Shown here one piece after another: positions 5,244 to 64,000 of a stretch of 64,000 nt of DNA (position 1 is the stretch's first letter; the number at the start of each line of letters is the position of its first letter). The position numbers and the translations under genes are program-made. The notes beneath the pieces were generated by a model. The model was not told the origin of the DNA. It saw only the letters and a list, made by a program, of their open reading frames with translations, and searched no databases. Location of the stretch: IMG/VR virus record IMGVR_UViG_3300044213_000107, positions 62,001 through 126,000 of that record; one strand, given 5' to 3'.

Positions 5244-5789
5244 TTATTGGCCTGAATATATGCGACGGTTAACCATTTCCCAGTTAACAATTCGCCATTG
5301 TGCAGACAAGTATTTTTTCTTGTTTGCAGCATAATCCAGTATCCAAGCGTGTTCCCACCAATCAACTAGTAGTGCTATATCAGTTTTGATAGTATGATTG
5401 CGGATAGTTTTAATAGCGCCATCGCGTGCCAAGTAAATCCATCCAGCACCCTGAAACGCCATTGCTGTACTTTCAAATTCTCGTTTAAATGTAAGGAAAT
5501 TAGTATAGTGTTTGTTTATTAACGCTAGACTAGCACCAAATGGTGTGTTGGCGTTTTTTGGCGGTCTTAGTTGTTTAAACCAAATATTGTGCAGGTAAGC
5601 ACCGGCTCGATTAAAAGCTGCATCGCCTTCACCTTGATTAAAACGATCTACATAACCTTTGTAGAGTTTATCATAGTGATTTTCGATATTAGGTTTACTA
5701 AGTACAGGTGCAAAAGAACCACAACCGTATGCAAGTTCGTATCTTTCAAGTTGTTCTTTTTCTTCTAATAAATCAATTATTTCACGCAT
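5244..5789 (-). CDS. Fe/Mn superoxide dismutase family protein
   Basis: Metal-ligand motifs ENHY, LHNIWF and DWWEHAW are present. Confidence 0.85.
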   Translation of the reverse strand: MREIIDLLEEKEQLERYELAYGCGSFAPVLSKPNIENHYDKLYKGYVDRFNQGEGDAAFNRAGAYLHNIWFKQLRPPKNANTPFGASLALINKHYTNFLTFKREFESTAMAFQGAGWIYLARDGAIKTIRNHTIKTDIALLVDWWEHAWILDYAANKKKYLSAQWRIVNWEMVNRRIYSGQ

Positions 5790-5792
5790 ATA

Positions 5793-6011
5793 TTATTTAT
5801 TGCGATATATGATGCGTCCACGGTTTATATCGTAAGGGCTCATTTCTATTTCTACGCTATCGCCCAATAATATACGTATATTATTTTGTCTAAGTTTACC
5901 ACCTAGTGTGGCTAGTACTACATGCCCAGTTTCTAATTGAACTCTAAACATCGCACTGGGCAGTACTTCGTCTATAGTGCCAGACATTTTAATTAAATCT
6001 TGTTTCGCCAT
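5793..6011 (-). CDS. infA: Translation initiation factor IF-1
   Basis: [24 protein letters not shown]...[16 protein letters not shown]...SPYD...GRIIYR. Confidence 0.97.
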
Positions 6012-6607: not shown

Positions 6608-6636
6608 ATTATAACATTAGACGCAGAAACCGTCAA
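6608..6636 (-). promoter_or_regulatory. sigma70-type promoter TTGACG-17-TATAAT
   Basis: Read directly on the minus strand upstream of 6580. Confidence 0.8.
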
Positions 6637-10330: not shown

Positions 10331-11434
10331 TTAGGTAATATTTAAAACTTGTGCCAAATAAGGATCGTAGTCAAGGAGAGATTTTCTAATAGGACTAAAT
10401 TGTACAATGTATTCTCTTAACTTTTCTATAGATGATGGATCTTGATTTTTGCCAATAAGTTGATAATAGTGGTCAAACTTTGAGTTAGAATTTGCTATAT
10501 CAATTAAAGAACTATTTTGAGGCCATTGAATTAAAGACATAAAACTTGGATTATTTAATGTATAAATTTTTAAATTTAAATTTAAAGAATTACAATATGT
10601 ATCAAGTTTGTGCAAATCATTTATATTTAACACACTTAAGGTACAATGTACCTGTAGATAATCTACTGTAGATTTGTAAAATTTTATATTACGATCTATA
10701 TCGTTCCATACACTTCCGTATCGTAACCACTCCGATTTCCGCCCAACTGCATCTAGACTTATAAACACGCAAACATAATTCCATATATTTTTTTCAAATA
10801 ATGTAGAATTAATTTTAGTTCCGTTAGTATGAAATTCAATCCTTGTTCTTTTAGATAAATTTAATTTTACTAACATTGATAAAAAATCTAATACAGATGG
10901 ATTATAAATAGGTTCTCCGCCGATTAGTGTCAGTGTAACAATATCGTGATAATCATAACTTTTAAGTATATTCTTTTTAAGATCAGGCCAATTCTTATTG
11001 AATTCTTTATTCGGATCAGTAAATGACACTGGTAGTATACCGATTAATCGTTTATGTTGAGCAATAACAGAACTCGAAGATTCGCCGCAAGTCCAGCAGG
11101 CTAGATTGCATATATTTCCAAATTTTAAATTCCACCTACTAGGCCATAATCCAAAATTTTTGTTTATAATAACCTGATCGTCAACTGCAGTTCTAAAACT
11201 ACTACCACTAAAAGATTCTTGTATCTTACAGCTGGCACATTCGTTTAACCAAGTCTGATTGTATAAACTATTTTTAAATGCTAATAGTCGATCATCCGCC
11301 CACCATTCTTCAAATGATTGATCTTCTAAACTATTGATTGTTGGAGATGCACTACAACAATTTCTAAATTGTGTATTTAATCCTGAAAATGCTTCAACGA
11401 ATGGAACCACACAAAATGGTTTATTAAAACTCAT
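10331..11434 (-). CDS. Radical SAM protein with N-terminal SPASM/twitch-like Cys cluster
   Basis: CNLACWTC (CxxxCxxC), GGEP and TNGT motifs; N-terminal FCVVPF...NCC...CASC. Confidence 0.9.
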   Translation of the reverse strand: MSFNKPFCVVPFVEAFSGLNTQFRNCCSASPTINSLEDQSFEEWWADDRLLAFKNSLYNQTWLNECASCKIQESFSGSSFRTAVDDQVIINKNFGLWPSRWNLKFGNICNLACWTCGESSSSVIAQHKRLIGILPVSFTDPNKEFNKNWPDLKKNILKSYDYHDIVTLTLIGGEPIYNPSVLDFLSMLVKLNLSKRTRIEFHTNGTKINSTLFEKNIWNYVCVFISLDAVGRKSEWLRYGSVWNDIDRNIKFYKSTVDYLQVHCTLSVLNINDLHKLDTYCNSLNLNLKIYTLNNPSFMSLIQWPQNSSLIDIANSNSKFDHYYQLIGKNQDPSSIEKLREYIVQFSPIRKSLLDYDPYLAQVLNIT

Positions 11435-12155: not shown

Positions 12156-12184
12156 ATTATACAACCAAAATCTTTTGTTGTCAA
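12156..12184 (-). promoter_or_regulatory. Consensus sigma70 promoter TTGACA-17-TATAAT
   Basis: Exact consensus, followed by ATACACATAGTAAAC and an AAGGAG RBS. Confidence 0.9.
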
Positions 12185-19032: not shown

Positions 19033-19061
19033 ATTATAACACAAAAGTGTTTAGTTGTCAA
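19033..19061 (-). promoter_or_regulatory. Consensus sigma70 promoter TTGACA-17-TATAAT driving the array
   Basis: Exact consensus. Confidence 0.88.
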
Positions 19062-25476: not shown

Positions 25477-26595
25477 TCAATTATCGCCCATTAATTCGTA
25501 TAGTTCTGGCAAGTACTCTCGCCAATCCATACCGTGATAATTTCGTGTATGTTCCATGTATCTGTAAAATTTTTTTCTACATTGTAGATCAAATGCACTA
25601 TTATCTATATATGCTTTTAAAAAATGTAAATCATTGTCATTTAAATAGCTAGATATTTTATCTTTTTCTTGTTCTGTTAAAATTGAATATGTTAAATATG
25701 GTGGATAACTCACAAAACCTATTTCATTAGTTAAAGAGATGCCAAGATTTTTCATATATTCGATATATTCTACTACACCAAATAAATTTAATATACTGTG
25801 TGTTGGATGAGATGCTAGATTAAATCCTTGAGATTTAAAATCAATTAAATTTAGATTGAATTTATTCCAGTCAGCACCTGTTCGTATAAATTCAAATTTT
25901 TTCTCAATTGCTTCAAAACTAACAACTAAATTAATTTTATTAAATTTTTTTAATATCGGAATATCTTTATAACTTACTGTTCCGTTTGTGTTAATATTTA
26001 AACAAGTATCGGGCCCTGCTGAATCTAATACCTTTTCTAAAAAAATACTTAACTTATTCATATTATACAACGGCTCTCCACCTATTATATTAACAAATTT
26101 TAAATTTTTAAAATCATCATCAGTGTAATCATAAACTGCAGATGGCCAAACATCTAAATTTTCAATTGACACACTAATGTCGTAATTATAAATTGTATTC
26201 GGTAATTTTAAAGCTTCGGGTATCCAACTACTGCTAGATGACGGGCGGCAATATCTACATTGGATATTACAATATCTTCCTGTATCAACAGTTAATTGCA
26301 TAAAATCTTGTACATTTGATTCTGTAGAATATAAATCTATGTAATTGGCTAAACTTAATCGTTTGCTGAAATTTTTCCCAGGGTGTAGAATTTCAGCATT
26401 ACGACATGTAGTACAATATTTTTCTGGCCATTCACCTTGGTCAAACGACTGTTTTATTTCATTGTAAACAGGACTTTGCAGCATTTTAGTGCGACTTGTT
26501 ATATTGGGTATGGGTTGAAAGCAGCACGGACCTTGGAATTGAGCATCGTATGCGTGTTCGAAATACCAGCAACGTATAGGTTCTTTTTGATTCAT
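25477..26595 (-). CDS. Radical SAM protein with N-terminal twitch/SPASM-like cluster, AT-rich
   Basis: CNIQCRYC, GGEPL and TNGT motifs; N-terminal C...PCC...CTTC. Confidence 0.9.
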   Translation of the reverse strand: MNQKEPIRCWYFEHAYDAQFQGPCCFQPIPNITSRTKMLQSPVYNEIKQSFDQGEWPEKYCTTCRNAEILHPGKNFSKRLSLANYIDLYSTESNVQDFMQLTVDTGRYCNIQCRYCRPSSSSSWIPEALKLPNTIYNYDISVSIENLDVWPSAVYDYTDDDFKNLKFVNIIGGEPLYNMNKLSIFLEKVLDSAGPDTCLNINTNGTVSYKDIPILKKFNKINLVVSFEAIEKKFEFIRTGADWNKFNLNLIDFKSQGFNLASHPTHSILNLFGVVEYIEYMKNLGISLTNEIGFVSYPPYLTYSILTEQEKDKISSYLNDNDLHFLKAYIDNSAFDLQCRKKFYRYMEHTRNYHGMDWREYLPELYELMGDN

Positions 26596-26613
26596 ACAAA
26601 TATTTAGTATATA

Positions 26614-26636
26614 AGAAACCCGCCGAAGCGGGTTCT
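26614..26636 (-). terminator. Intrinsic terminator after the tmRNA
   Basis: AACCCGC-TTCG-GCGGGTT followed by TCTT on the minus strand. Confidence 0.85.
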
Positions 26637-26958
26637 GGTTGTTTCTGTTACGAGGTATTTCCTACCCTAAGCAGTGTTTAGGCTGCTAAGGCAAATAGTG
26701 AGTCATTTGCATTTACTTGTTTTGCTTCTTTTACGGAGATCGCCTACCGAGCGCCATTATTCCTACTCCTGACCCTGTCGAACCTATTTCCGGCCCATCA
26801 AAAACATACTATCCTACACTCACTTACGATCGGCGTAACCAGCGGTAGTTAAAAACCTGCTCATGCGTTCCTATAGTATGCTTTTGGTGGACCGGGCGGG
26901 GAACCGCCCCCCGCGTCCAGAATCCATTTCCTAATAACAGTTTACGCTGTTCTTTGTA
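26637..26958 (-). ncRNA. ssrA: Circularly permuted (two-piece) tmRNA; tag (A)ANDSLFALAA
   Basis: The acceptor piece ends CCGGTCC-A-CCA (26885) and is followed by an 88-nt intervening hairpin. The coding piece starts GGGCCGG (26796), giving a 7-bp stem with G3:U70. Tag ORF GCA AAT GAC TCA CTA TTT GCC TTA GCA GCC TAA at 26710-26678. Outer boundaries are approximate. Confidence 0.92.
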
Positions 26959-27004
26959 GTATATATTTATTTCTAATAGGAGTCAAGTCTATAGGCAATA
27001 AATG

Positions 27005-30605: not shown

Positions 30606-31319
30606 TTAGCGATTGCGACGGGGTTTAGCCAGACCTAATATTTCGAGTATTCTTATGTACATCCAGCCAATATCAAACTCCCACCATTTACGACTAAATT
30701 TTGGATTTGATCCATCGCCATGATGCGAATTATGGAGCTCTTCGCCGCCAATCCATATACCGATAGGAATCAAATTTCTCGATGTGTCGTTTGTATCATA
30801 ATTTCTATAACCCCACCAGTGTGCCAGTCCGTTAATAACACCCGCTGCCCAAAAGGGTATCCAAATCATTTGTATTCCCCATACTACGAATCCCGCGGAA
30901 CCAAAAAACAACAAGTCCATGACCAGCATCAAAAGAATTCCATAAAGATTATATGGAGTATATAAATGTCGTTCGATCCAGTCGTTAGGAGTACCAATGC
31001 CTAACTTTAATACTTCTGGATCTCGTTTAGCCTTTACATAATAAAATGCACCGCCAAATAATATATGCCAAATTCCATAGATTTTAGGACTATGTGGATC
31101 TGCCGGTGTATCGCTGGCCTGATGATGTCGGCGATGTACTGCTACCCATTCCCGTGTGGTCATACCAGTTGTAAGCCACAGCCAAAATCTCATCACATGT
31201 GATATTACTGGATGAAATGTAACTGCACGATGTGCTTGGCTACGATGTAGGTATAGAGTTACACACATGATTGTGATGTGTGTCATTATTAGTGTGGCTA
31301 TGATTTCTTGTACCGGCAT
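30606..31319 (-). CDS. desA: Membrane fatty acid (acyl-CoA/lipid) desaturase
   Basis: His boxes HRSQAH, HRRHH and HNSHH. Confidence 0.93.
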   Translation of the reverse strand: MPVQEIIATLIMTHITIMCVTLYLHRSQAHRAVTFHPVISHVMRFWLWLTTGMTTREWVAVHRRHHQASDTPADPHSPKIYGIWHILFGGAFYYVKAKRDPEVLKLGIGTPNDWIERHLYTPYNLYGILLMLVMDLLFFGSAGFVVWGIQMIWIPFWAAGVINGLAHWWGYRNYDTNDTSRNLIPIGIWIGGEELHNSHHGDGSNPKFSRKWWEFDIGWMYIRILEILGLAKPRRNR

Positions 31320-33183: not shown

Positions 33184-33232
33184 AATAGTTGTATTATAAC
33201 ACCAAACGAATTCCCTGTCAAGAGCCAGGGTT

Positions 33233-39301: not shown

Positions 39302-39892
39302 CTATCTTCGCTCCACAATACGATCCGCAAGTCCATACGCAACTGCTTGCTCTGCACTCATAAAGAAATCACGTTCCATATCTGCAGAAATTTCATCAAA
39401 TGTTTTTCCTGCACTATTGTGGCTAACATAAATCTGTGTAAGATTCTTCTTTAAAGCTAAGATTTCCTCAACTTGGATCAGCATATCTGTGGCTTGTCCA
39501 CGTGCGCCGCCCGATGGCTGATGAATCATGTGACGAGCATTTGGCAAGATCAATCGTTTCCCGGCAGCACCGGCGTTTGCAAGTAAGCTTCCCATACTGC
39601 AGGCCTGGCCCATAACAATGGTAGATACATCAGGCTTAATGAACTGCATAGTATCATAGATTGCCATGCCAGCAGTGACAACTCCACCGGGTGAGTTGAT
39701 GTAAAAGAGGATGTCTGCATCTGGATCTTCGCTTTCTAAAAAAAGTAATTGACTAACAACAAGACTAGCAGAATGTTCGTTAACATCTGTGTCTAGCATT
39801 ACAATGCGGTCTTTGAGTAAACGACTATAGATGTCGTAAGCTCGTTCACCGTTTGAAGTTTTTTCTAGTACGGTTGGTACAAAATTTGGCAT
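39302..39892 (-). CDS. clpP: ATP-dependent Clp protease proteolytic subunit
   Basis: [33 protein letters not shown] and ERDFFM. Confidence 0.97.
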
Positions 39893-42374: not shown

Positions 42375-42472
42375 AATTTAAGCCATTATTAGTTAAACAC
42401 AAAGTCTATTATACGCAAAAGAAAAAACCCTGTCAAATGCAGGGTTTTTTGGTGTTGTTTTTTAGCAACAGC

Positions 42473-46962: not shown

Positions 46963-47471
46963 CCTGTAATCTGTAATGTATATCTATCTTCTATGCCAAT
47001 ATTAGCTGCTGCATGTGGTAAGTCATATGCCCATTCAACAATATCACCTGCCGACCAATTAACTATGCCTTCGCCATTGACTTCACTGTAATGTCCCGGT
47101 TGCCAGTCTTCTAAAAAAACTACAGCACGACGAATGCGATGTTCCTGTCCCTGCAAGTTAAATATTTTAACATACTTAACATATAAATCAGAATGAGTTG
47201 GTAATATTGTACCAGTCTTCATTCGATAGTAACTGGTACCAATATCTTTCCAACTATATTTTGTAAACAAGTCAACAAATCTATAGTTCCACACAGGTTG
47301 TGTGCTACGCATATCGCACATTTCTCCTGTAAACTGTCCAGTATAGCCTTGCTCCCTCCATCGATTAACACTCGCTTGGTCATTAAAAGATTCTCGATTG
47401 TAGTCTAATGTTTTAAAATCATCGGTCCAGAATGGTGTTATTTTAAATTTACTGTAAGCGGGTGTTGCCAT
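46953..47471 (-). CDS. Cupin/2OG-Fe(II) oxygenase-like protein
   Basis: LPTHSD (HxD) ... HAAAN ... RYTLQITG; likely start MATPAY. Confidence 0.65.
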   Translation of the reverse strand: MATPAYSKFKITPFWTDDFKTLDYNRESFNDQASVNRWREQGYTGQFTGEMCDMRSTQPVWNYRFVDLFTKYSWKDIGTSYYRMKTGTILPTHSDLYVKYVKIFNLQGQEHRIRRAVVFLEDWQPGHYSEVNGEGIVNWSAGDIVEWAYDLPHAAANIGIEDRYTLQITGWV

Positions 47472-48690
47472 AATGAATAACCTTAACTCCTTGAATGTTA
47501 GATGAATATGTGCGCCACGGATCAACAATAACGCTGCCTTCTGAGATTTCGCAGTACATACCTTGTTGTTCGACAACTCCAGCATAGCCATAAGTGATTT
47601 GTTTATTATGAGCTAACAAAACAACACCCTTTACTGGCTTGTCTGGCGCCGGATCGCCTGTTAATGGATCAATGTATGTAGGTTTGTAACCAAATTCTTG
47701 ACAATAATATCCAACTAATAAACTATAACTACCTTCTGTGTATGCTACATCGGGTTTGTATGCTTTACCGTGAATATAAATCGGTAGGTCGTATAACTTT
47801 GCTTGTTCTACCAATGACTGTGCCATTAATCGTGCTTGTTTTTCTCTGGCATGCATGATAGCATCAAACAAATCATAACCTAAATCAAGTTCTTGGGCGA
47901 GATATCTTAATGCAATATTATCGCGCGGATGACACGGACCTGCATCTCCAAGTCCTGCAGTCATATACTTAGGCCCCATGATCCGCATATTAGATTTAGC
48001 AAGTGCTGCAGTCACAACATCAACATTAATGTTTCCTTGTCGAATAGCAACGTCTTGAATCATGTTAGCTAGACCAATTTTGGCACTAATGAATGTATTA
48101 TAAAATACCTTGATACATTCAGCTTCGTCCCAGGTTCCAACTTCGTAGCGCGGATCATTTTCCATTATAGTTTGATAAAATTCAATTAGTTCCTGTGCAT
48201 CACCGGTTACGGATCCATCTTCGGTTCCAATAATAACCATTTCGGGATTGACCATATCCCACTCTACTGTGCCCATGGCAATCAAATATGGGTTATATAC
48301 AAATCGTGCGTTGGTGATATGATTTCGCAATTGTTTTCTTGTAGTACCAGGCAACACAGTTGAAATCAAAACAATCAATTGATCTGCAACAGCATATTGA
48401 TTAATATCTTGCAAAACTTGATTAACTAATGTATAATCGAAGTCTTTATTAGGTAAATGTGTAATTGGCTGTTCGCCACCATAAACAGGGTCGTGTGGTG
48501 TTTGGACTGCAATAAAGACTATGTCTTTGCCAACTACTGCTTCTTTTAAGGTATTAGCTATTTTGATTTTGTTGCTGGTGCGTGGATAAATATCATACCC
48601 AGTAACATCGTGTTTGCTAGCCATAACTTCGGCGCAGGCCAAACCTAATTTTCCAATTCCTATAAACCCTACGTTTTTTCTATTACTCAT
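47449..48690 (-). CDS. UDP-glucose/GDP-mannose dehydrogenase family protein
   Basis: GIGKLG, AVQTP, ISTV.PGT, KVFYNTF, GPCHPRD and YKP motifs. Confidence 0.92.
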   Translation of the reverse strand: MSNRKNVGFIGIGKLGLACAEVMASKHDVTGYDIYPRTSNKIKIANTLKEAVVGKDIVFIAVQTPHDPVYGGEQPITHLPNKDFDYTLVNQVLQDINQYAVADQLIVLISTVLPGTTRKQLRNHITNARFVYNPYLIAMGTVEWDMVNPEMVIIGTEDGSVTGDAQELIEFYQTIMENDPRYEVGTWDEAECIKVFYNTFISAKIGLANMIQDVAIRQGNINVDVVTAALAKSNMRIMGPKYMTAGLGDAGPCHPRDNIALRYLAQELDLGYDLFDAIMHAREKQARLMAQSLVEQAKLYDLPIYIHGKAYKPDVAYTEGSYSLLVGYYCQEFGYKPTYIDPLTGDPAPDKPVKGVVLLAHNKQITYGYAGVVEQQGMYCEISEGSVIVDPWRTYSSNIQGVKVIHYGNTRLQ

Positions 48691-51343: not shown

Positions 51344-52402
51344 TTATTCCCCTGAAAAATATTTATGCCATACTTTTTTTGTTTTATTTGTATAAGAGTT
51401 TAATGAGTTTCGATTCGTCCAAACATTAAGTCTAGGCCAATTATATGTTGTATGTAATTTTTTAGTGATATCATTACTATCAACTGGGTCAGCAGAAAAT
51501 GTTTCAACACTCCATGGTATTTCGTTACTACCAACAATGGGAACTCCTTGGCTCAACAGATCTGCGGTTACAATATTAAATGTTTCACTAAAACTTACCT
51601 GTAGTCCAATATCCATTTCAGCACACAATTCTAAAAACTGTTCTCTTGGTCGCCATTGATGATTTATTAATTCGTGACCTGTTGTGTATAACTGTTCAAA
51701 CATTCCGCGAAGATTATGTAATACCGGGCCTCCTTGCATTTCTATACGCCCAGTGTTAATGTGAAAACGTAATTTCTTGCCAATTTGTTCAGCAAAATTT
51801 ATGGCCGCATGTGCCTGTAACAGATGATTTTTCAATGGACGTACTGCGCCAAAACATCCAATATCAATAGTGTCTTTATTTTTATCTATTCTTTTTGCAG
51901 ATTGATATTCTTGTGGATAAAAGTTCGGCAAGTAAATTACTCGTTGTTCTGTAGTCAATAAGTCCCACCGATTTTTTATTTGCAAATAACTGCGAGTTTC
52001 TTCTAACATACGAGGTGCATTAACACCAATAATGATATTTTCAAAATTACTGTATTCACCAATCCAATTCATGGCCATGCCTTCGCCGGCCATAAACGGC
52101 ATTTCGCTGTGTAATCGAATGATCCATTTTACCGTTGGGTGTAATTTTTGTAGAATTAAAAACTTTTCTGGTACTACCCATAATGCTTCAATAATAACAT
52201 GAGTTGGTTGATGTTTTGTTACCAATCTATCTATGCAGTTATTATCAATGGCAACTTCAAGAACTGAGTCTATACCTATGTCTCGTAACATTTGATCAAC
52301 GAAACTTGCACTATTATAAAGTCCTGTGCTTAATCCAACATGACTGTGTAATACTGCATGATAATCTTCTCGACGTTTTAATATAAACAATACCTTTGAC
52401 AT
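51344..52402 (-). CDS. Glycosyltransferase-like protein (GT-B)
   Basis: IGCFGAVRPLKN...SFSETFNIVTAD...GVPIV. Confidence 0.75.
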   Translation of the reverse strand: MSKVLFILKRREDYHAVLHSHVGLSTGLYNSASFVDQMLRDIGIDSVLEVAIDNNCIDRLVTKHQPTHVIIEALWVVPEKFLILQKLHPTVKWIIRLHSEMPFMAGEGMAMNWIGEYSNFENIIIGVNAPRMLEETRSYLQIKNRWDLLTTEQRVIYLPNFYPQEYQSAKRIDKNKDTIDIGCFGAVRPLKNHLLQAHAAINFAEQIGKKLRFHINTGRIEMQGGPVLHNLRGMFEQLYTTGHELINHQWRPREQFLELCAEMDIGLQVSFSETFNIVTADLLSQGVPIVGSNEIPWSVETFSADPVDSNDITKKLHTTYNWPRLNVWTNRNSLNSYTNKTKKVWHKYFSGE

Positions 52403-52468: not shown

Positions 52469-53194
52469 TTATTGCATATTAGCAATGATAAATTCTGCTT
52501 CGGGAATTCTAGTATGACCGTTTTGACTACCGAGTACCACAACCCGGCGAATACCACGGTCAGTTTTTACAGTTAGTATAATACAACCACCAGCGGCATG
52601 TGTGGTTCCGGTTTTGCTTACAATAAATTCGTAGGTTTTTCCAATTAATGGATTTGTATTTTTGAATATTAAATATTTTTTTCGAAGCTGTATTTCTACT
52701 TTTGTTTGTTTTGCCGCACTAACTATTAACGGATATTGTTCTGCTTGATTTAATAACTTCAGTAAGTCGTTTGCTGTACTTGTATTTTCTGCGTTTAACC
52801 CAGATGCGTCGGCATAGGTAGTATTGTTCATGCCAAATTCACGAGCATACATATTCATGTCTGCAACACACCCTGCATAACTTCGTGTATAGTTTTTACA
52901 TAACATATCAGCGGCATGATTGTCACTGTGCACAAGAGTTAGGTAAATTAACTCCTGCCGTGTTAAACGTAGTTGTCGATTGTATTGAAATGTTTGATCT
53001 AGTGGTTGATTTGCTCGTAATACTGCAATAACTGTCATTACCTTTGTAACACTAGCAATTGACAATACTTCATCTCTGTTTTTACCATCCAATATTACGT
53101 TGTCTTGATCAGCAATCAGCCAAGACTTGGCAGTTAGATCTTTGGCCGACACTGCGCAACTTAGAAAAAATAACAAATATATTAGGTACCGCAT
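52469..53194 (-). CDS. D-alanyl-D-alanine carboxypeptidase/endopeptidase (peptidase S11)
   Basis: SVTK (SxxK), SDN (SxN) and KTG motifs; signal peptide; promoter TTGATA-17-TATAAT at 53201-53229. Confidence 0.92.
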   Translation of the reverse strand: MRYLIYLLFFLSCAVSAKDLTAKSWLIADQDNVILDGKNRDEVLSIASVTKVMTVIAVLRANQPLDQTFQYNRQLRLTRQELIYLTLVHSDNHAADMLCKNYTRSYAGCVADMNMYAREFGMNNTTYADASGLNAENTSTANDLLKLLNQAEQYPLIVSAAKQTKVEIQLRKKYLIFKNTNPLIGKTYEFIVSKTGTTHAAGGCIILTVKTDRGIRRVVVLGSQNGHTRIPEAEFIIANMQ

Positions 53195-53211: not shown

Positions 53212-54222
53212 TTACTTTGTACTTATCAAGTTATTTTCAAAGATTTCCCAGGCTCTTTGCCAAGTCCAACGTTGACTGCCTGCATGTACCTGTGTTCGGT
53301 CCATTTCTAGACATTTCTCAACTGCCACAGACAAACTCTCACAATCTGGATCTACCATGAATCCGGTTACGCCTTGGTCAACCACATCTGCTGGACCTTG
53401 GCATCGGTAGGCTGCCACCGGAGTACCGCAGGCCATGGCTTCAATCATCACAATACCAAATGTCTCCCATCGACTGGGAAATACAAATACTTCGGCATTG
53501 GCATAGTACTCAGCCAACTCTATGCCGGTTTTGAATCCAGTGAAATGCACTTCAGGATATCGTTTTTTGTAGGTTTCCAACATGGGCCCGTCGCCTACCA
53601 TGATTTTGAGATATCCTGGATAGTCCAACTGAAAAAAATCTTCCAGATTCTTTTCCTTGCTTACTCTGCTAACACACAACAGATATTTTCCTGGAAGATT
53701 TTTTCTAAGCTCAGGATCAAATATAGTTCGATCAACACCGCGAGTCCAGGGTATGATTTCACCATCAAAGCCGTGTGCACGCAGTTCTTTGACCATGCTG
53801 TCTGTGGTGGTCAAGACCTTGCCCGAGTGCTTGTGGAACCAGCGCACAAAACGCCAGGTGATCCATTCAGGAACGCCCAAGATCTTTTTCAACCCTTCAG
53901 GAAACTTAGTATGATAAGCGGTATTGTGCCTAACACCAACCAGTGATAGATATGCTCGAGCCCACAGACCCAAAGGACCTTCTGTTTGGATGTGTATATA
54001 ATCCGGAGCAATCTCCTCGATCTTCTCCCCAATATTGCTAGGCCAGGCCAATTTGACTTCGTTGTAGCCAGGGCAATCAATATAGCTGAAGCACCCGGGG
54101 TGCAGATTATGAACAATATAACCATCCCGTAACGCAAGCGCCTCAATATTTTTGTAAGTAGTAACGACACCATTTATTTGGTCAGGAAGATTATCCCCGA
54201 TCATTAGTATTTTCTTTGACAA
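53212..54222 (-). CDS. Glycosyltransferase family 4
   Basis: DNLPDQINGV, TEGP.G, VSRVSKEKN and ETFGIVMIEAMACGTPV; TTG start inside the endonuclease gene. Confidence 0.92.
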   Translation of the reverse strand: MSKKILMIGDNLPDQINGVVTTYKNIEALALRDGYIVHNLHPGCFSYIDCPGYNEVKLAWPSNIGEKIEEIAPDYIHIQTEGPLGLWARAYLSLVGVRHNTAYHTKFPEGLKKILGVPEWITWRFVRWFHKHSGKVLTTTDSMVKELRAHGFDGEIIPWTRGVDRTIFDPELRKNLPGKYLLCVSRVSKEKNLEDFFQLDYPGYLKIMVGDGPMLETYKKRYPEVHFTGFKTGIELAEYYANAEVFVFPSRWETFGIVMIEAMACGTPVAAYRCQGPADVVDQGVTGFMVDPDCESLSVAVEKCLEMDRTQVHAGSQRWTWQRAWEIFENNLISTK

Positions 54223-54987: not shown

Positions 54988-55875
54988 TCATTCGTTCATC
55001 CTAAATCTTATGTATTCTGTTAATTTGTCAGCTACATCAATTTCGCAATATTTTTCAAATCCACCAAAACCTGGATTACTATTTGCTTCACAAACAACAA
55101 AACCATTTTCTCCAAATAGTAAATCAACTCCAGCAATGTTTAATCCTAGTACTCGTGCAGTTTCAATGGCCAGGTACTCAATTTCTGGTGTGACTTCAAA
55201 ATTAGCACCTGTACCACCTCCGGTAATATTTGCACGAAAATCACCTTCAGGAGCTGTACGCTTCATGGCACCCAATACCCGCCCGCCAATTACAAACACA
55301 CGCAGATCTTCTCCTGGCCTAGCACTCATATACTCCTGTACAATCATTGTTTTTTTAGCGCCAAGCGTATCAATAAATTCCATTAATTTTTTATAATCTC
55401 TTTTACGTTCGCATAGATATACGCCTTCGCCGTAGCTGCCGGTGACCAATTTTACCACACAAGGAAATCCTATGTGTTGTTCAACTAGGCCGTCATCAAT
55501 AGGATAGCGTACCATCATGGTCTTGGGAATCGGTATGTTACTTGCGGCCAACCGTTGTCCTGTTCTTAATTTGTCACGAACTATATTAATGCTTACACTC
55601 GGATTAACGCACGGAACGCCCATTTGCTCAAATTGTCTAATAATTGCTAACTGAAATGGTAAAATACCAGCACCCAATCTTACTAAAACTAGATTTGGTG
55701 TTGGTAAGTCTTGCCCTTTGTATTTTACAGATTCTTGAAGATTTTTGCTGACTACAATGTCAAAGTCGTCAGGATGTGCAACTGTTGTGGTTATTCCTTT
55801 GCTGGAAAAACTATCTACTAGCCTGCTGGTTTCGTATTCATTACGTTCTTGTTTTGATATTATCAATACTGTCAT
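54988..55875 (-). CDS. rimK: RimK family ATP-grasp alpha-L-glutamate ligase
   Basis: RDKL, IPKT, PCVVK..GSYGEGV, VQEY, DLRVFVIG, FRAN, AGVD and EANSNPG motifs. Confidence 0.9.
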   Translation of the reverse strand: MTVLIISKQERNEYETSRLVDSFSSKGITTTVAHPDDFDIVVSKNLQESVKYKGQDLPTPNLVLVRLGAGILPFQLAIIRQFEQMGVPCVNPSVSINIVRDKLRTGQRLAASNIPIPKTMMVRYPIDDGLVEQHIGFPCVVKLVTGSYGEGVYLCERKRDYKKLMEFIDTLGAKKTMIVQEYMSARPGEDLRVFVIGGRVLGAMKRTAPEGDFRANITGGGTGANFEVTPEIEYLAIETARVLGLNIAGVDLLFGENGFVVCEANSNPGFGGFEKYCEIDVADKLTEYIRFRMNE

Positions 55876-60994: not shown

Positions 60995-61830
60995 AATACT
61001 TCCTATTATCTTTTAATGTATTTTTTGCATAGTATGCAATGTATGCTTGTTCAAATGAATTGGTTGGTATAGTTGTATAGTCTTCATCTGATTCAATTTT
61101 TTTTATAATTTCTTTTACTTTAGACCAAGAATGGTATGCTTTATTTTTACTCATAAATTGATTCCAAAATTCCATCAAACCAACCGTGTCTATGTCTGTA
61201 TCAACATCTAAAAACTTTTTAATTTTTATTAACTCATCTATTAATGATTGAAAATTAAAAAAATTATTCATTTTTACATGTATACATTCCATGCTTGAAT
61301 CCATCCACTCATTAATAAATTTACAATGCGGCGATGCATTTATGAACCAATAGAGCTGAGTTGCCACTTCAAATGTAGTATAATTTTTTTTTATCTCCAC
61401 AATTTTGAATAAAACTATCTACAAATGATTTGCTAATTTTTATAAATTTTTCTTGAGTGTTTATCTCTAAAGTGTCTAAATCTATATTATTATCATTGAC
61501 AGTATACCATGTATTGTATTCTAACAAGTATTCCGTGTCTACGTCTATTCGTATTAAACCATAGATTGGGAAATCGACAATATTATCCGACTTATAAATT
61601 TTTTTATACTCGTCACTAACAAAATGCGAAGCAGATTTATGATATGCAACAGTGTTCTTTGAACGTTGATAATCTAAATTATTGAAAGCATTATGACTAG
61701 AACCAACTTCTGTTAGTGGATTGAATGCTTTAGCACTTGGTAACTCCAACAAAAATCGATTTATCAGGTAATCTAAAAAAATGCCATGAGATCCAGGATA
61801 GTAATCAATTTGAAGTTGAGAAAACCTCAT
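60984..61830 (-). pseudogene. AT-rich gene apparently split by a +1 frameshift in an A9 tract (ORFs 61369-61830 and 60984-61400)
   Basis: GAT AAA AAA AAA TTA: removing one A fuses the two ORFs. The second ORF has no obvious RBS. Confidence 0.55.
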
Positions 61831-62144
61831 TAACTATCCTGTTCCAATTTAATTTGTAAAGGGAACCCGTTATTTCGAGCAAGTAGCGTTGCTTCGACAC
61901 CTTTTTGCTCAGCTAACTCAAAAGGCAAAGTAATAACCACTGCAGAACCTTCTTCGTGTATTTTCATAGTTAACTCAACTGCAGTTTCTTCGGTGTGATC
62001 AAAAATAGTTTTAAGAGATTCAACTACAAATTCCATGGTTGTTTGGTTATCATTTAGATAAATGACATTAAACAATTTTGGAGGTGCAAGATCTAATTTT
62101 GGTTCAATACAAGTACGAGTCAAAGTTTCTGTGTTAGTTGTCAT
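61830..62144 (-). CDS. clpS: Clp protease adaptor ClpS
   Basis: FNVIYLNDNQTTMEFVV...IHEEG.A...AEQK...PL. Confidence 0.95.
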   Translation of the reverse strand: MTTNTETLTRTCIEPKLDLAPPKLFNVIYLNDNQTTMEFVVESLKTIFDHTEETAVELTMKIHEEGSAVVITLPFELAEQKGVEATLLARNNGFPLQIKLEQDS

Positions 62145-62201: not shown

Positions 62202-62642
62202 TTATTTTGCAAATGTTATTGCAATTTTTTTAGGTTTGTCTTCTTCTGGAACTACTTGTTCAAGAGCAATAGCCAAAATACCATTTTTAACTGTTGCACC
62301 ACGAACTTCAATGTGTTCGGCTAAAGGGAATGTGCGCACAAAATTGCGAGCCGAAATACCTTTGTGTAGATATTCTACATCATCGCGTTTTGCTTGCTCA
62401 CCTTTAACTGTAAGCACATTTTCTTTGAGTTCTACGTCAATTTCACTTTCGTTAAAACCAGCGACTGCAACTTCGATTACATAATGTGTGTCATCAATTT
62501 TGACTACATTATGTGGTGGATAATTGCCGTCTGTTTTGCTGTTTGCAAAAGTGCGATTTAACTGCTCAAACAAGTTGTCAAAGCCAATGGCATGACGGTG
62601 TAAAGAGGGTAAATCAATCGTGTGAAGTGTAAAATTTGTCAT
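62202..62642 (-). CDS. Small heat-shock protein Hsp20 (IbpA/B-like)
   Basis: IGFD, YPPHNV, AVAGF, YLHKGISARNF and NGIL motifs; start MTNFT. Confidence 0.93.
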   Translation of the reverse strand: MTNFTLHTIDLPSLHRHAIGFDNLFEQLNRTFANSKTDGNYPPHNVVKIDDTHYVIEVAVAGFNESEIDVELKENVLTVKGEQAKRDDVEYLHKGISARNFVRTFPLAEHIEVRGATVKNGILAIALEQVVPEEDKPKKIAITFAK

Positions 62643-62733
62643 TTTTGTTTCTCCTTTATAAGCAAGTTTTATGACTAAGTTGTGTAGCCCACTATTGGCA
62701 CTACACATTTATTTATTATACACAGAAAAAATC

Positions 62734-62973
62734 TTAATACAATCTTTTTGGTAAACTATCTGCTTCGATTTTCTTTTGCCAGCGACGCTTGGCTTGACTA
62801 CGTGCTTTTTTACGAGCAGTAGTGGGTTTTTCGTAAAATTCTTTTTCACGAAGTTCTTGTATTAATCCAGTTTCTTGGATTTTCTTTTTAAATTTGCGCA
62901 GGGCTTTTTCTACGTTATCGTAGCTAACGTAAACTGTTAGACCTCGTTTGCGACTTCTATTATCGTATGTCAT
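62734..62973 (-). CDS. rpsU: 30S ribosomal protein bS21
   Basis: NVEKALRKFKK...ELREKEFYEKPT..RK. Confidence 0.93.
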   Translation of the reverse strand: MTYDNRSRKRGLTVYVSYDNVEKALRKFKKKIQETGLIQELREKEFYEKPTTARKKARSQAKRRWQKKIEADSLPKRLY

Positions 62974-62974
62974 A

Positions 62975-64000
62975 TTATGTGTAAATTGGTTCAGTTTTAT
63001 ATTTAACTGTTTCAGCAGTTATTTGTATTTTTTTATAGCCGGCTTGTTTAATTTCGGATATTTTATACAAAAATGGTTGTAAAGTTCTCTCTATGATGCT
63101 TTTTAATGCTCTAGCACCTATTTTCATGCTTGCAGCTTCTTCCGCAATGGTTTTTACAGCTTCTGGTGTAAATTCTAATGCAACCGAGTCTGCTTCAAAA
63201 TAAAACTGCATTTGTTTAATTAAATTGTTTTTTGGTTTAATCAGTATACTAACAAAATCATCTAGAGTTAATTTATTTACAGAAACCAAAACAGGAAATC
63301 TACCTACAAATTCAGGAATCATTCCATACTGTATAAAATCTTCCCAGTCAGCGGTGTCAGAAGTTTTTATGTTATTAGTAGTTGATCTAAACCCTATGCC
63401 GGTTCCGCGGCATCGTTGTTCTATAATTCGATCTAGATCACTAAATGCTCCACTGGCTATAAACAGTATGTTTGTTGTATCTATATCAATTTGGTCCAAG
63501 CTAGGATGTTTTTTGTTATTGCCAATTGGTACTCTGCATACTGTACCTTCAACTAGTTTTAATAGTGCCTGTTGTACACCCTCACCACTAACATCTCGAG
63601 TAATACTAGGCCCTTCGCTTTTACGGCCAATTTTATCTATTTCATCTAAAAATACAATTCCGCGTTGGCATGCTTCTACATCGTAATCTGCTTCAGCAAA
63701 TAAACGAGCAATCATGGTATCTACATCATCGCCAACATACCCCGACTCGGTTAATGTTGTTGCATCGGCAATAACAAACGGTACATTCAAGTATCGTGCA
63801 ATAGTTCGTGCTAATAATGTTTTCCCTGATCCAGTTGAACCAAATAACAATATATTACTTTTTTCTAATTCTACACGACTGTTAAAAAATACACGTTTAT
63901 AATGATTTGTGACCCCGACACTCAATGCTATTTTTGCAGCATCTTGGCCAATTACGTATAAATCTAAAAACTGTTTTATCTTAACAGGATCTAATGCTCG
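62975..64000 (-). CDS. clpX: ATP-dependent Clp protease ATPase ClpX (5' end outside the window)
   Basis: YVIGQD, KSNILLFGSTGSGKT, DATTLTESGYVG, DEIDKI, RDVSGEGVQQALLK and GARAL; frame open to 64000. Confidence 0.95.
   Translation of the reverse strand, partial: RALDPVKIKQFLDLYVIGQDAAKIALSVGVTNHYKRVFFNSRVELEKSNILLFGSTGSGKTLLARTIARYLNVPFVIADATTLTESGYVGDDVDTMIARLFAEADYDVEACQRGIVFLDEIDKIGRKSEGPSITRDVSGEGVQQALLKLVEGTVCRVPIGNNKKHPSLDQIDIDTTNILFIASGAFSDLDRIIEQRCRGTGIGFRSTTNNIKTSDTADWEDFIQYGMIPEFVGRFPVLVSVNKLTLDDFVSILIKPKNNLIKQMQFYFEADSVALEFTPEAVKTIAEEAASMKIGARALKSIIERTLQPFLYKISEIKQAGYKKIQITAETVKYKTEPIYT

What the first reader, a model, noticed from the sequence alone, without database searches (positions are those of the whole stretch)
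26637..26958. Phage-encoded circularly permuted two-piece tmRNA
Seen: the 3' tRNA-like half (T-arm with loop GGCGGTT, then CCGGTCC-A-CCA) lies upstream of the 5' half (GGGCCGG...GGTTCGAC). They are separated by an 88-nt segment closed by a long stem (AAAAGCATACTAT/ATAGTATGTTTTT). The acceptor stem has the G3:U70 alanine identity pair, and inter-piece pairings CAGGGTC/GATTCTG and CTGTTA/TAACAG are present. The tag ANDSLFALAA ends in the ClpX-recognised LAA, and a terminator follows. Established: permuted two-piece tmRNAs occur in alphaproteobacteria, some betaproteobacteria and some cyanobacteria. The non-canonical T-loop recalls the alphaproteobacterial type, while the tag resembles betaproteobacterial ANDERFALAA. 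It sits behind a TAAATA late-type motif. No smpB lies in this window.
Basis: partly seen in the sequence, partly recalled or inferred. Interest (0 to 1): 0.8.

Follow-up and report, generated by a model that had tools for sequence, protein, structure and literature searches.

The report
Phage-borne two-piece tmRNA gene
An uncultured 260-kb freshwater phage carries a complete, circularly permuted gene for tmRNA, the RNA that rescues stalled ribosomes. This kind of gene is already known from phages; this copy joins an alpha-type tRNA-like core to a beta-type body, and the same phage encodes the ClpXP protease that recognises such tags.

Summary
Rfam gives tmRNA_permuted 125 bits (cut-off 47) and beta_tmRNA 115 bits (cut-off 84). 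ARAGORN calls it "Permuted" with tag ANDSLFALAA, but only at a lowered threshold.

The gene has its own sigma-70-type promoter, an acceptor piece ending in CCA, and an 88-nt intervening sequence closed by a 13-bp stem. It also has a coding piece with G3:U70 and a terminator hairpin. The window is part of a 260,723-bp IMG/VR contig seen in many freshwater metagenomes.

Phage-encoded two-piece tmRNAs are already published, and I parsed 133 further complete permuted genes in IMG/VR contigs. This is therefore a new member of a known kind.

- The gene is a mosaic. The tRNA-like cassette alone scores best as alpha_tmRNA, and the coding body alone scores best as beta_tmRNA.
- The "late TAAATA" reading is not supported, and the CTGTTA/TAACAG pairing is not conserved.
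- The phage also encodes ClpX, ClpP, ClpS, bS21 and an IF-1-like protein. No SmpB was found in the 80 kb examined.

Expression and processing remain untested.

The parts
26958..26986 (-). Sigma-70-type promoter: -35 TTGACT (26986-26981), 17-nt spacer, -10 TATACT (26963-26958). Predicted transcription start near A26951/A26950.
   Evidence: Found by the promoter scan. It is one of 14 TTGAC-N18-TANANT sites in the window against 1.14 expected, and 13 of them are on the coding strand. Relative L142 has TTGACT-17-TATAAT at the same place.
26885..26950 (-). Acceptor piece of about 66 nt. It holds the 5' tail with the P2 strands (AGCGU 26948-44, GUUAUU 26938-33, GAUUCUG 26924-18), the T-arm (stem 26914-09 / 26901-26896, loop GGCGGUU 26908-02), the acceptor 3' strand CCGGUCC 26895-89, discriminator A 26888 and the encoded CCA 26887-85.
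   Evidence: Rfam alignments, the ARAGORN 3' tRNA domain and direct reading.
26797..26884 (-). Intervening sequence of 88 nt, predicted to be removed from the precursor. Its ends pair over 13 bp (26885-73 with 26812-00), which extends the acceptor stem. It holds only an unconserved 14-codon ORF.
   Evidence: The fold has z -3.9. In most of the 134 parsed phage genes with an intervening sequence longer than about 25 nt, the closing stem has 9-10 of 10 pairs. Its sequence matches no relative beyond background.
26612..26796 (-). Coding piece. It starts with the acceptor 5' strand GGGCCGG 26796-90 (G3 pairs with U26891) and the D-loop analogue AAAUAGGUUCGAC. Then come the P2 3' strands (CAGGGUC 26777-71, AAUAAU 26761-56, GCGCU 26754-50), the PK1 hairpin CGG 26749-47 / CCG 26736-34, the tag frame, a P5 hairpin with the stop codon in its loop, the 3' domain containing AACAGAA 26649-43, and the terminator.
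   Evidence: Rfam alignments, ARAGORN and the co-fold.
26678..26710 (-). Tag reading frame: resume codon GCA 26710-08 and stop UAA 26680-78, encoding ANDSLFALAA.
   Evidence: ARAGORN reports a resume consensus and this tag peptide. The Rfam alignment agrees. The closest tags in relatives are ANDSQFALAA and ANDSKFALAA.
26612..26635 (-). Terminator-like hairpin: GAACCCGC, loop UUCG, GCGGGUUU, followed by CUUAUAU.
   Evidence: The hairpin was found by the scan, which reported it on the + strand. It matches the terminal hairpin of the beta_tmRNA model. Relatives have a different GC hairpin plus a U run at the same position.
39302..39892 (-). ClpP, the proteolytic subunit that would degrade LAA-tagged proteins. 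This is functional context, not part of the gene.
   Evidence: Pfam CLP_protease 259.5 bits. NCBIfam ClpP subfamily 298.5 bits against a cut-off of 249. The Ser/His/Asp motifs are present.
62975..64000 (-). ClpX, which runs on to about position 64177 beyond the window. It is the unfoldase that recognises C-terminal LAA tags. This is functional context.
   Evidence: NCBIfam ClpX equivalog 429.5 bits against a cut-off of 359. The full 400-aa product has a zinc-finger domain. GYVG, KKH and IGF motifs are present.

Best explanation
This is an intact, circularly permuted ssrA (tmRNA) gene of a freshwater jumbo phage.

Proposed mechanism:
1. Host RNA polymerase with sigma-70 transcribes one precursor of about 340 nt from the gene's own promoter. 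This step is inferred from the promoter match.
2. In the precursor, the 3' half of the tRNA-like domain lies upstream and the 5' half downstream. The two halves pair into a 7-bp acceptor stem, which the ends of the 88-nt intervening sequence extend by 13 bp. This fold is shown by sequence, by folding and by the covariance models.
3. RNase P would cut 5' of G26796, and 3' trimming would stop at the encoded CCA (A26885). That releases the intervening sequence and leaves an acceptor piece of about 66 nt paired to a coding piece of about 185 nt through the acceptor stem and three P2 helices. This step is inferred by analogy with Caulobacter two-piece tmRNA.
4. G3:U70 and discriminator A direct charging by alanyl-tRNA synthetase. 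SmpB binds the tRNA-like domain; it is probably the host's, because none was found in 80 kb of the phage.
5. The complex enters stalled ribosomes, and translation resumes at GCA 26710. The nascent chain receives (A)ANDSLFALAA. The C-terminal LAA then delivers it to ClpXP, which this phage also encodes.

The likely benefit is that ribosome rescue and amino-acid recycling keep running while host transcription declines and mRNA is being degraded. This benefit is inferred.

In evolutionary terms the gene is a mosaic. An alpha-type tRNA-like cassette sits in a beta-type body, and its modules are shared with different phage relatives.
For: Identity of the gene:
- RF04321 scores 125.1 bits and RF01850 scores 115 bits, both full length.
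- ARAGORN with -ps reports a permuted tmRNA with a resume consensus and tag ANDSLFALAA.
- The fold matches the model, with z -3.9.

An intact transcription unit:
- The promoter is one of a 14-member set against 1.14 expected.
- A terminator hairpin follows the gene.

Family conservation with compensatory change:
- I parsed 134 complete permuted genes in IMG/VR loci. They carry different but fully paired acceptor and T stems, closing stems on the intervening sequence, and tags ending in AA.
- The P2 outer helix varies as AGCGU/GCGCU, GCUGU/ACAGC and GUUGU/GCAAC in this gene, L140 and L137 (read).

Mosaic structure:
- The tRNA-like cassette alone scores best as alpha_tmRNA (48.1 bits, E 5e-13).
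- The body alone scores best as beta_tmRNA (56.4 bits, E 5e-17).
- The best-matching relative differs by module. The tail is 84% identical and the 3' domain 100% identical to L142. The T-arm is 97% and the acceptor-5'/D-loop 100% identical to L175, L172 and L062.
- L175 carries the L029/L172 cassette, including its intervening sequence, inside an L140-like body.

Phage context:
- Contig identity, an adjacent virion structural protein and PHROG matches.

Downstream pathway:
- ClpP and ClpX carry their catalytic, pore and docking motifs.

Precedent:
- Phage two-piece tmRNAs are published (PMC9004378), as are tmRNAs in huge phages (PMC7162821).
Against: - There is no RNA evidence. The RNA libraries that share words with this gene hold only pieces of relatives, not this gene.
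- The T-loop GGCGGUU is non-canonical, and it differs at its last base from the alpha consensus GGCGGUA.
- ARAGORN rejects the gene at its default threshold.
- The beta_tmRNA score falls to 81.4, below the cut-off of 84, when promoter and terminator are trimmed. The 3' hairpin of that model has 4-5 non-standard pairs.
- No SmpB gene was found, and the host is unknown. Compatibility with a host SmpB is therefore assumed.
- The U tract after the terminator hairpin is weak.
- The related loci were collected with exact patterns taken from this gene. That biases which modules look shared.
Confidence: 0.8

Rival explanations
1. The gene is a bacterial tmRNA gene. Either the contig is a misclassified bacterial or plasmid fragment, or the sequence is an attachment-site remnant picked up from a host ssrA locus.
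For: tmRNA genes are common integration sites, and fragments of them occur in prophages (PMC9004378, PMC4383910). The window holds many cell-like genes, including ClpXP, ClpS, SOD, RimK and a desaturase.
Against: The gene is complete and has its own promoter and terminator. No integrase was seen in the 80 kb examined. A virion structural protein, an endolysin and tail-fibre-like genes lie on the same contig. Two signature motifs of this gene give no tmRNA match in representatives of 185,579 bacterial species. One of those motifs, the 3' domain, recurs in 31 IMG/VR contigs in slightly relaxed form, and the tRNA-like 5' half that forms part of the other recurs in 9.
Confidence: 0.03
2. The RNA is a decoy or inhibitor that titrates host SmpB or blocks host trans-translation, rather than a working tmRNA. 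Mycobacteriophage DS6A carries such a molecule, consisting of the tRNA-like domain only.
For: A DS6A-like molecule inhibits tmRNA in E. coli (PMC4131195, PMC11915505). This gene has a non-canonical T-loop and no phage smpB nearby.
Against: A full tag frame is present, with a resume consensus, a stop codon in a hairpin loop and a canonical LAA end. Relatives keep tag frames that end in AA or AV despite extensive sequence change. A decoy would not need these features.
Confidence: 0.07
3. The gene is a decaying, non-functional relic.
For: ARAGORN at its default threshold fails to call it. The middle of P2 and the 3' hairpin fit the Rfam models poorly. The intervening sequence is unique to this gene.
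Against: Every identity element is intact: the 7-bp acceptor stem with G3:U70, the discriminator A, the CCA, the T-arm, the D-loop analogue, the resume codon and the stop codon. The gene scores 125 bits. The tRNA-like cassette is 97-100% identical to cassettes in at least six other contigs. The promoter belongs to the phage's own over-represented set.
Confidence: 0.07
4. The gene works as a tmRNA, but its main role is to re-route quality control. On this view the phage tag is tuned to the phage's own ClpX/ClpP (and ClpS), so that host proteins or stalled products are selectively recycled, or so that it signals host state for lysis timing.
For: ClpX, ClpP, ClpS, bS21, an IF-1-like protein and RimK are encoded in the same 64-kb window. 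Such roles have been speculated for phage tmRNAs (PMC9004378, PMC7162821). Phage G also combines a tmRNA with ClpXP (PMC12484599).
Against: No test links the tag to the phage ClpX. ANDSLFALAA looks like an ordinary proteobacterial tag that host ClpXP would also take. The genes are 12-36 kb apart and are not one operon.
Confidence: 0.3

Closest known systems
Permuted (two-piece) tmRNA, Rfam RF04321 tmRNA_permuted. The experimental model is the Caulobacter crescentus two-piece tmRNA (Keiler, Shapiro and Williams 2000, cited in PMC9004378).
   Same: The gene order is acceptor piece, intervening sequence, coding piece. The tRNA-like domain has G3:U70 and an encoded CCA. P2 helices hold the two pieces together, and the tag frame ends in LAA. 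The model matches at full length with 125 bits.
   Different: It is encoded by a phage. The T-stem has 6 bp and the loop is GGCGGUU. Processing and function are untested here.
beta_tmRNA, Rfam RF01850 (betaproteobacterial two-piece tmRNA)
   Same: It is the best-scoring clan member for the whole gene (115 bits) and for the coding body alone (56.4 bits). The P2a helix xxUUCUG/CAGGGxx, the PK1 region, a tag resembling ANDE(H/R)FA(M/L)AA and the terminal hairpin all fit.
   Different: The T-loop is not UUCGAUU. The D-loop analogue is AAAUAGG rather than uaCUGGU. The 3' hairpin of the model is not formed. Without the flanking promoter and terminator the score is 81.4, below the cut-off of 84.
alpha_tmRNA, Rfam RF01849 (alphaproteobacterial two-piece tmRNA)
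   Same: It is the best-scoring clan member for the tRNA-like cassette alone (48.1 bits). The T-loop GGCGGUU compares with the consensus GGCgGUA, and the D-loop GAAAUAGGUUCGAC with GAAAuAGGAUCGAC. An AACAGAA motif lies near the 3' end, as in the consensus.
   Different: The P2, PK1 and tag regions fit the beta model better. The last T-loop base is U rather than A. The AACAGAA motif is followed by a terminator hairpin, not by the second stem of the alpha pseudoknot.
Two-piece ssrA of Methylophilales phage Melnitz and of other marine and aquatic phages (Buchholz et al. 2022, PMC9004378)
   Same: It is a phage-encoded permuted tmRNA in a large aquatic myophage-like genome, placed behind an early-type promoter. 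Its type need not match the host lineage.
   Different: blastn of the gene and its flanks (601 nt) finds nothing in 50,697 phage records. No glutamine riboswitch is reported here by Rfam. This gene is a chimera at module level, not a whole alpha-type gene.
Bacillus megaphage G (PMC12484599) and the huge phages of Al-Shayeb et al. 2020 (PMC7162821)
   Same: These are very large phage genomes that carry a tmRNA together with translation and proteolysis genes (ClpX and ClpP in phage G).
   Different: The phage G tmRNA is reported as one 308-nt RNA with tag AKLNITNNELQVA. The gene here is permuted and has a proteobacterial-style tag.

Membership tests
tmRNA, permuted gene form (RF04321) | Covariance-model score at or above the curated gathering score | tested here: met
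   125.1 bits against a cut-off of 47, E 5e-24, model positions 1-213 of 213.
tmRNA, permuted gene form (RF04321) | The 3' half of the tRNA-like domain (T-arm, acceptor 3' strand, CCA) lies upstream of the 5' half on the same strand, separated by an intervening sequence | tested here: met
   CCA at 26887-85 and GGGCCGG at 26796-90, with 88 nt between them. ARAGORN labels the gene 'Permuted'.
tmRNA, permuted gene form (RF04321) | Alanine identity: a 7-bp acceptor stem with a G3:U70 wobble, plus discriminator A | tested here: met
   GGGCCGG pairs with CCGGUCC, including G26794:U26891, and A26888 is the discriminator.
tmRNA, permuted gene form (RF04321) | A tag reading frame with an alanine resume codon, an in-frame stop and a hydrophobic C-terminus | tested here: met
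   GCA through UAA encodes ANDSLFALAA. ARAGORN finds the resume consensus.
tmRNA, permuted gene form (RF04321) | The precursor is processed into two base-paired mature RNAs | tested here: inconclusive
   The RNA libraries hold only contigs of relatives. No reads with ends were available for this gene.
tmRNA, permuted gene form (RF04321) | Works with SmpB, is charged with alanine, and tags stalled nascent chains | not testable with these tools
   No SmpB was found in window -7.6 kb to +8.7 kb. Biochemical tests are needed.
beta_tmRNA (RF01850) | Score at or above the gathering score | tested here: met
   115 bits against a cut-off of 84 over 27000-26612, which includes promoter and terminator. 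The score is 81.4 when these flanks are cut off.
beta_tmRNA (RF01850) | Canonical T-loop (UUCGAUU) and the beta-type D-loop analogue of the model consensus | tested here: not met
   The loop is GGCGGUU and the D-loop is AAAUAGG. The tRNA-like cassette alone is assigned to alpha_tmRNA.
beta_tmRNA (RF01850) | The 3' hairpin enclosing the CCUUGuuACcaAA loop | tested here: not met
   4-5 of 6 pairs are flagged as non-standard.
alpha_tmRNA (RF01849) | T-loop GGCRGUA and D-loop GAAAUAGGAUCGAC as in the model consensus | tested here: inconclusive
   GGCGGUU matches 6 of 7 positions, and GAAAUAGGUUCGAC has one mismatch. The cassette scores 48.1 bits, just under the whole-gene cut-off of 50.
alpha_tmRNA (RF01849) | AACAGAA in the loop of the 3'-terminal pseudoknot | tested here: inconclusive
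   AACAGAA is present at 26649-43 after a GGUA/UACC hairpin. The second pseudoknot stem could not be established.
alpha_tmRNA (RF01849) | Best-scoring clan member over the whole gene | tested here: not met
   beta_tmRNA wins the clan competition for the whole gene and for the coding body. The alpha score for the whole gene is not shown by the tool.

The most novel reading that the evidence does not exclude
Circular permutation places both halves of the tRNA-like domain next to each other in the DNA, as one contiguous patch: about 55 nt of functional sequence plus the intervening sequence, about 140 nt in this gene. Phages exchange this patch as a cassette between otherwise unrelated tmRNA bodies. 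On this reading, the gene here is a natural alpha-cassette/beta-body chimera whose cassette was selected to fit the host's SmpB, AlaRS and EF-Tu. Its tag feeds a phage-encoded ClpXP, so the phage runs most of its own tag-and-destroy pathway.
Probability: 0.3. Interest if true: 0.6.

Novelty: new member of a known kind. Interest (0 to 1): 0.4.

Why it matters
Ribosome rescue is one of the host functions that large phages are thought to prop up or take over. This locus adds three things.

- It is a clean example from an uncultured freshwater jumbo phage, and the usual annotation tool misses it (ARAGORN at default settings).
- It shows, with curated models, that the alpha and beta types of two-piece tmRNA are not sealed lineages in phages. 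Instead they are assembled from exchangeable modules.
- It places the tmRNA in a genome that also encodes ClpX, ClpP, ClpS, ribosomal protein bS21 and an IF-1-like protein. That combination makes a phage-run quality-control pathway testable.

It does not change what is known about how tmRNA works.

Tried and rejected
- ARAGORN at default settings found nothing in the whole window or in the region. It finds the gene only with -ps. It also misses relative L175 but finds L142, L140, L062, L152 and L070.
- blastn and megablast against 50,697 phage records found no match for the gene or for 20 kb around it. No cultured relative is available.
- Two scans of representatives of 185,579 bacterial species were used to seek a host-lineage tmRNA. 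A 22-mer of the 3' domain gave 0 hits. A combined D-loop and PK1 pattern gave 10 hits, all chance matches inside high-GC coding genes. The host remains unknown.
- RNA evidence was sought without success. Twelve RNA libraries share 5-13% of the sampled words. Laying four of them showed only short pieces of related tmRNAs with other tags (ANDQKFALAA, ANSSEYALAA, AANDDAYLMAA). No piece spanned this gene.
- The T4-type late promoter reading was rejected. TATAAATA is not enriched, whereas the sigma-70 pattern is enriched 12-fold.
- The CUGUUA/UAACAG inter-piece helix was rejected. It is favoured thermodynamically in this one sequence. However, it is not conserved, and it competes with a nested P2 middle helix (GUUAUU/AAUAAU) that has a counterpart in L142 (UUAUC/GGUAG).
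- SmpB was not found by Pfam on ORFs of 140-259 aa. It does not appear in the precomputed Pfam lists for the 8-9 kb on each side of the window. tblastn with E. coli SmpB against the window, both flanks and all fetched loci (about 1.6 Mb in all) also found nothing.
- My first module-identity table was wrong because of an aligner setting. It was replaced by a hand-written fitting alignment.
- The primary papers on two-piece tmRNA (PMC16621, PMC516066) are not held. The alpha signature motifs were therefore taken from the Rfam consensus printed, not from memory.
Full report
**What is there.** The feature lies on the minus strand. Read 5' to 3' on that strand, the locus contains the following parts.
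- A promoter: TTGACT, a 17-nt spacer, then TATACT (26986-26958).
- An acceptor piece of about 66 nt (about 26950-26885). It carries a 5' tail, a T-arm (stem GCGGGG/CCCCGC, loop GGCGGUU), the acceptor 3' strand CCGGUCC, discriminator A and an encoded CCA.
- An intervening sequence of 88 nt (26884-26797).
- A coding piece that starts at G26796. It holds the acceptor 5' strand GGGCCGG, which gives G3:U70, and the D-loop analogue AAAUAGGUUCGAC. Then follow the 3' strands of three P2 helices, a small PK1 hairpin and the tag frame GCA...UAA (26710-26678, ANDSLFALAA). After the tag come a hairpin with the stop codon in its loop, a 3' domain containing AACAGAA, and a GC-rich terminator hairpin (26635-26616).

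**Is it more than chance?** Rfam reports tmRNA_permuted at 125.1 bits (cut-off 47, E 5e-24). It also reports beta_tmRNA at 115 bits (cut-off 84, E 3e-34). Both matches cover the full model. The segment from P2a through the intervening sequence folds exactly as the model requires: P2a, the T-arm, and the acceptor stem running into a 13-bp closing stem. Its z-score is -3.9 against 200 dinucleotide shuffles. ARAGORN finds nothing at its default threshold. With -ps it reports a 'Permuted' tmRNA with the same domains and tag, and notes that the tag is not in its list. Standard phage annotation would therefore miss this gene.

**Context.** The neighbouring radical-SAM protein matches IMGVR_UViG_3300044213_000107 at 100% identity. 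That contig is 260,723 bp long, and a window position plus 62,000 gives the contig position.
- Genes are dense and lie almost all on one strand.
- PHROG matches include a phage-type DNA ligase, nucleases, an endolysin and tail-fibre-like proteins.
- A 736-aa protein just beyond the window matches a virion structural protein family at 376 bits. It is 45-47% identical to virion proteins of Puniceispirillum phage HMO-2011 and of T4-like cyanophages.
- The DNA is held by at least 13 freshwater metagenome runs from 11 samples.
- There is no nucleotide match in 50,697 phage records.

**Promoter.** TATAAATA occurs 6 times in the window against 7.85 expected. TTGAC-N18-TANANT occurs 14 times against 1.14 expected, and none of 100 shuffles reached that count. 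Thirteen of the 14 sites are on the coding strand, and one of them is the tmRNA promoter. The gene therefore belongs to the phage's set of host-polymerase promoters. This agrees with the early-promoter placement described for phage Melnitz (PMC9004378).

**Relatives.** Three pattern scans of IMG/VR returned many loci.
- A scan for the tRNA-like 5' half returned 9 contigs.
- A scan for the 3' domain returned 31 contigs, including contigs of 342 kb and 344 kb.

A structure-aware parser found 134 complete permuted tmRNA genes in these loci, counting this one. They have varied but fully paired acceptor and T stems, and most longer intervening sequences have closing stems of 9-10 pairs out of 10. 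Their tags mostly end in AA. Rfam confirms a sample of them. Phage-borne permuted tmRNAs are thus common. This matches the 53 unique two-piece forms found among 402 tmRNA-bearing phage genomes by Buchholz et al. (PMC9004378). The tmRNA database also lists 79 unique bacteriophage tmRNA sequences of all forms (PMC11915505), and tmRNAs have been reported in huge phages (PMC7162821).

**Alpha type or beta type?** The gene is both, module by module.
- Over the whole gene beta_tmRNA wins the clan competition. It drops to 81.4 bits once promoter and terminator are trimmed.
- The tRNA-like cassette alone (26775-26926) is assigned to alpha_tmRNA at 48.1 bits, E 5e-13.
- The coding body alone (26600-26774) is assigned to beta_tmRNA at 56.4 bits, E 5e-17.
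- The alpha consensus printed by Rfam has T-loop GGCgGUA, D-loop GAAAuAGGAUCGAC and a 3' AACAGAA motif. This gene has GGCGGUU, GAAAUAGGUUCGAC and AACAGAA.

A module-by-module fitting alignment gives discordant best relatives (the background for unrelated sequence is about 55-70%).
- The tail is 84% identical and the 3' domain 100% identical to L142.
- The T-arm is 97% and the acceptor-5'/D-loop 100% identical to L175, L172, L173 and L062.
- The PK1 region is 85% identical to L137.
- The tag is 85% identical to L152.
- The terminator is 88% identical to L140 and L175.
- The intervening sequence matches nothing.

L175 carries the cassette of L029/L172, including their intervening sequence, inside an L140-like tail and body. 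I read that as a direct cassette swap. Among the 29 genes with the beta-like 3' domain, 7 have GGCNGUN T-loops and the rest have UUCGAYU-like or UGCRAMU loops. The D-loop analogue changes together with the T-loop. One caveat applies: the loci were collected with patterns taken from this gene, which biases which modules appear shared.

**Inter-piece pairing.** The helix GAUUCUG/CAGGGUC (P2a) is in both Rfam models and is conserved. Outside it I find a nested middle helix (GUUAUU/AAUAAU) and an outer helix (AGCGU/GCGCU). The outer helix shows compensatory variants in relatives: GCUGU/ACAGC in L140 and GUUGU/GCAAC in L137 (read). Even so, the duplex energy between the tail and the 3' domain is not better than shuffled tails in this gene (z -1.5). 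The same holds across 23 distinct relatives (mean z +0.28), whereas tail-to-P2 duplexes average z -0.76. I treat this pairing as fortuitous or, at most, an alternative.

**Partners.** No SmpB was found by any of four routes:
- Pfam on ORFs of 140-259 aa;
- the precomputed Pfam lists for about 8 kb on each side of the window;
- tblastn with E. coli SmpB against the window and both flanks;
- the same tblastn against all fetched loci, about 1.6 Mb in all.

About 180 kb of the contig remains unexamined. The window does encode other relevant proteins.
- ClpP at 39302-39892: 259.5 bits in Pfam, and above the NCBIfam subfamily cut-off.
- ClpX at 62975 to about 64177: above the equivalog cut-off, with the zinc finger, GYVG, a KKH loop and IGF.
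- ClpS, ribosomal protein bS21 and Hsp20, next to ClpX.
- RimK and an IF-1-like protein.

ClpX is known to recognise the C-terminal LAA of tmRNA tags. That is established knowledge and was not tested here. Phage G is a precedent for a tmRNA together with ClpXP (PMC12484599).

**Mechanism.** Shown by sequence and models:
- a complete permuted ssrA gene with its own promoter and terminator;
- a precursor fold that juxtaposes the two halves of the tRNA-like domain;
- intact alanine identity elements and an intact tag frame.

Inferred by analogy with bacterial two-piece tmRNA:
- RNase P cleavage at G26796 and 3' trimming to the CCA, which release the intervening sequence;
- alanylation, SmpB binding and delivery by EF-Tu;
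- tagging with (A)ANDSLFALAA, followed by degradation by ClpXP.

Speculative: the benefit to the phage. One possibility is that rescue capacity is sustained while host mRNA decays. Another is that products are routed to the phage's own protease.

**No expression evidence.** RNA libraries sharing words with the gene contain only short pieces of related tmRNAs. Some of these pieces are abundant in lake metatranscriptomes, and they carry tags such as ANDQKFALAA and ANSSEYALAA.

**Verdict.** This is a real, intact, phage-encoded permuted tmRNA gene. It is a new member of a known kind, and its chimeric alpha/beta make-up and its genomic company give it some added interest.

Noticed in passing
window 39302-39892 (-), 61830-62144 (-), 62202-62708 (-), 62734-62973 (-), 62975 to about 64177 (-): The phage encodes a proteostasis and translation set: ClpP, ClpS, Hsp20, ribosomal protein bS21 and a full-length ClpX. 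The ClpX has its zinc finger and its GYVG, KKH and IGF motifs.
   Followed up: partly
window 5793-6011 (-), 5244-5789 (-), 54988-55875 (-): An IF-1/eIF-1a-like protein of 72 aa, an Fe/Mn superoxide dismutase and a RimK-family ligase (226.6 bits against a cut-off of 143.4). These are further translation and stress genes in the same window.
   Followed up: no
whole window, e.g. 6608-6636, 12156-12184, 19033-19061, 33193-33221, 42408-42436 (all -): Near-consensus sigma-70 promoters (TTGACx, 17 nt, TATAAT) are strongly over-represented: 14 against 1.14 expected, and 13 are on the coding strand. This suggests heavy reliance on host RNA polymerase in this part of the genome.
   Followed up: partly
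L099, L058, L066, L076, L080, L113, L016 (one family); L105, L028 (a second family); also L152, L158, L137, L141, L165: In many related phage tmRNA genes the intervening sequence starts with a Shine-Dalgarno-like AAGGA(G) just after the CCA. It then encodes a small, often hydrophobic ORF of 23-78 aa. In many of them, including the first family, the UGA stop ends one base before G1 of the coding piece. In two families most differences between copies fall at third codon positions (for example [5,1,11] and [15,5,35] by codon position). That pattern points to real small proteins inside the excised segment. The gene in this window has only an unconserved 14-codon ORF.
   Followed up: partly
L141, L154, L155, L159-L162, L166, L138, L029/L064: Several phage relatives with the same 3' domain encode unusually long tags of 28-29 aa. 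An example is ANANTGEVTVSGKNVKFSARSVKRQSLAV, which ends in LAV rather than LAA.
   Followed up: no
window 25477-26595 (-) and 10331-11434 (-): Two twitch-domain radical-SAM proteins (about 180 bits each against a cut-off of 170). One lies directly downstream of the tmRNA terminator.
   Followed up: no
window 30606-31319 (-): A 237-aa protein matches the DesA-family fatty-acid desaturase model at 396 bits (cut-off 400), but it covers only the first 241 of 385 model positions. It may be a truncated or split desaturase.
   Followed up: no
L142 4132-14175 and L140 1441-2040: In the closest relatives the tmRNA gene sits inside or beside a tRNA array: 18 tRNAs in L142 and 5 in L140. This 64-kb window has no tRNA gene at all.
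   Followed up: partly
L137, L149, L143 (upstream of the tmRNA gene): In several relatives the tmRNA gene directly follows an ORF whose C-terminus looks like that of a cold-shock protein. This was read by eye and not tested.
   Followed up: no
window 26640-26692 (-) as laid in RNA runs X24, X25, X14 and X15: Lake and wastewater RNA libraries contain abundant short contigs of related tmRNAs. Across the tag end and the 3' domain these are identical or nearly identical to this gene, but they carry other tags. Relatives of this family thus appear in environmental RNA libraries, although such libraries can also contain DNA, so transcription is not shown.
   Followed up: partly
window 47449-48690 (-), 51344-52402 (-), 53212-54222 (-), 52469-53194 (-): A cell-envelope cluster: a UDP-glucose dehydrogenase, two glycosyltransferases and a D-Ala-D-Ala carboxypeptidase.
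   Followed up: no
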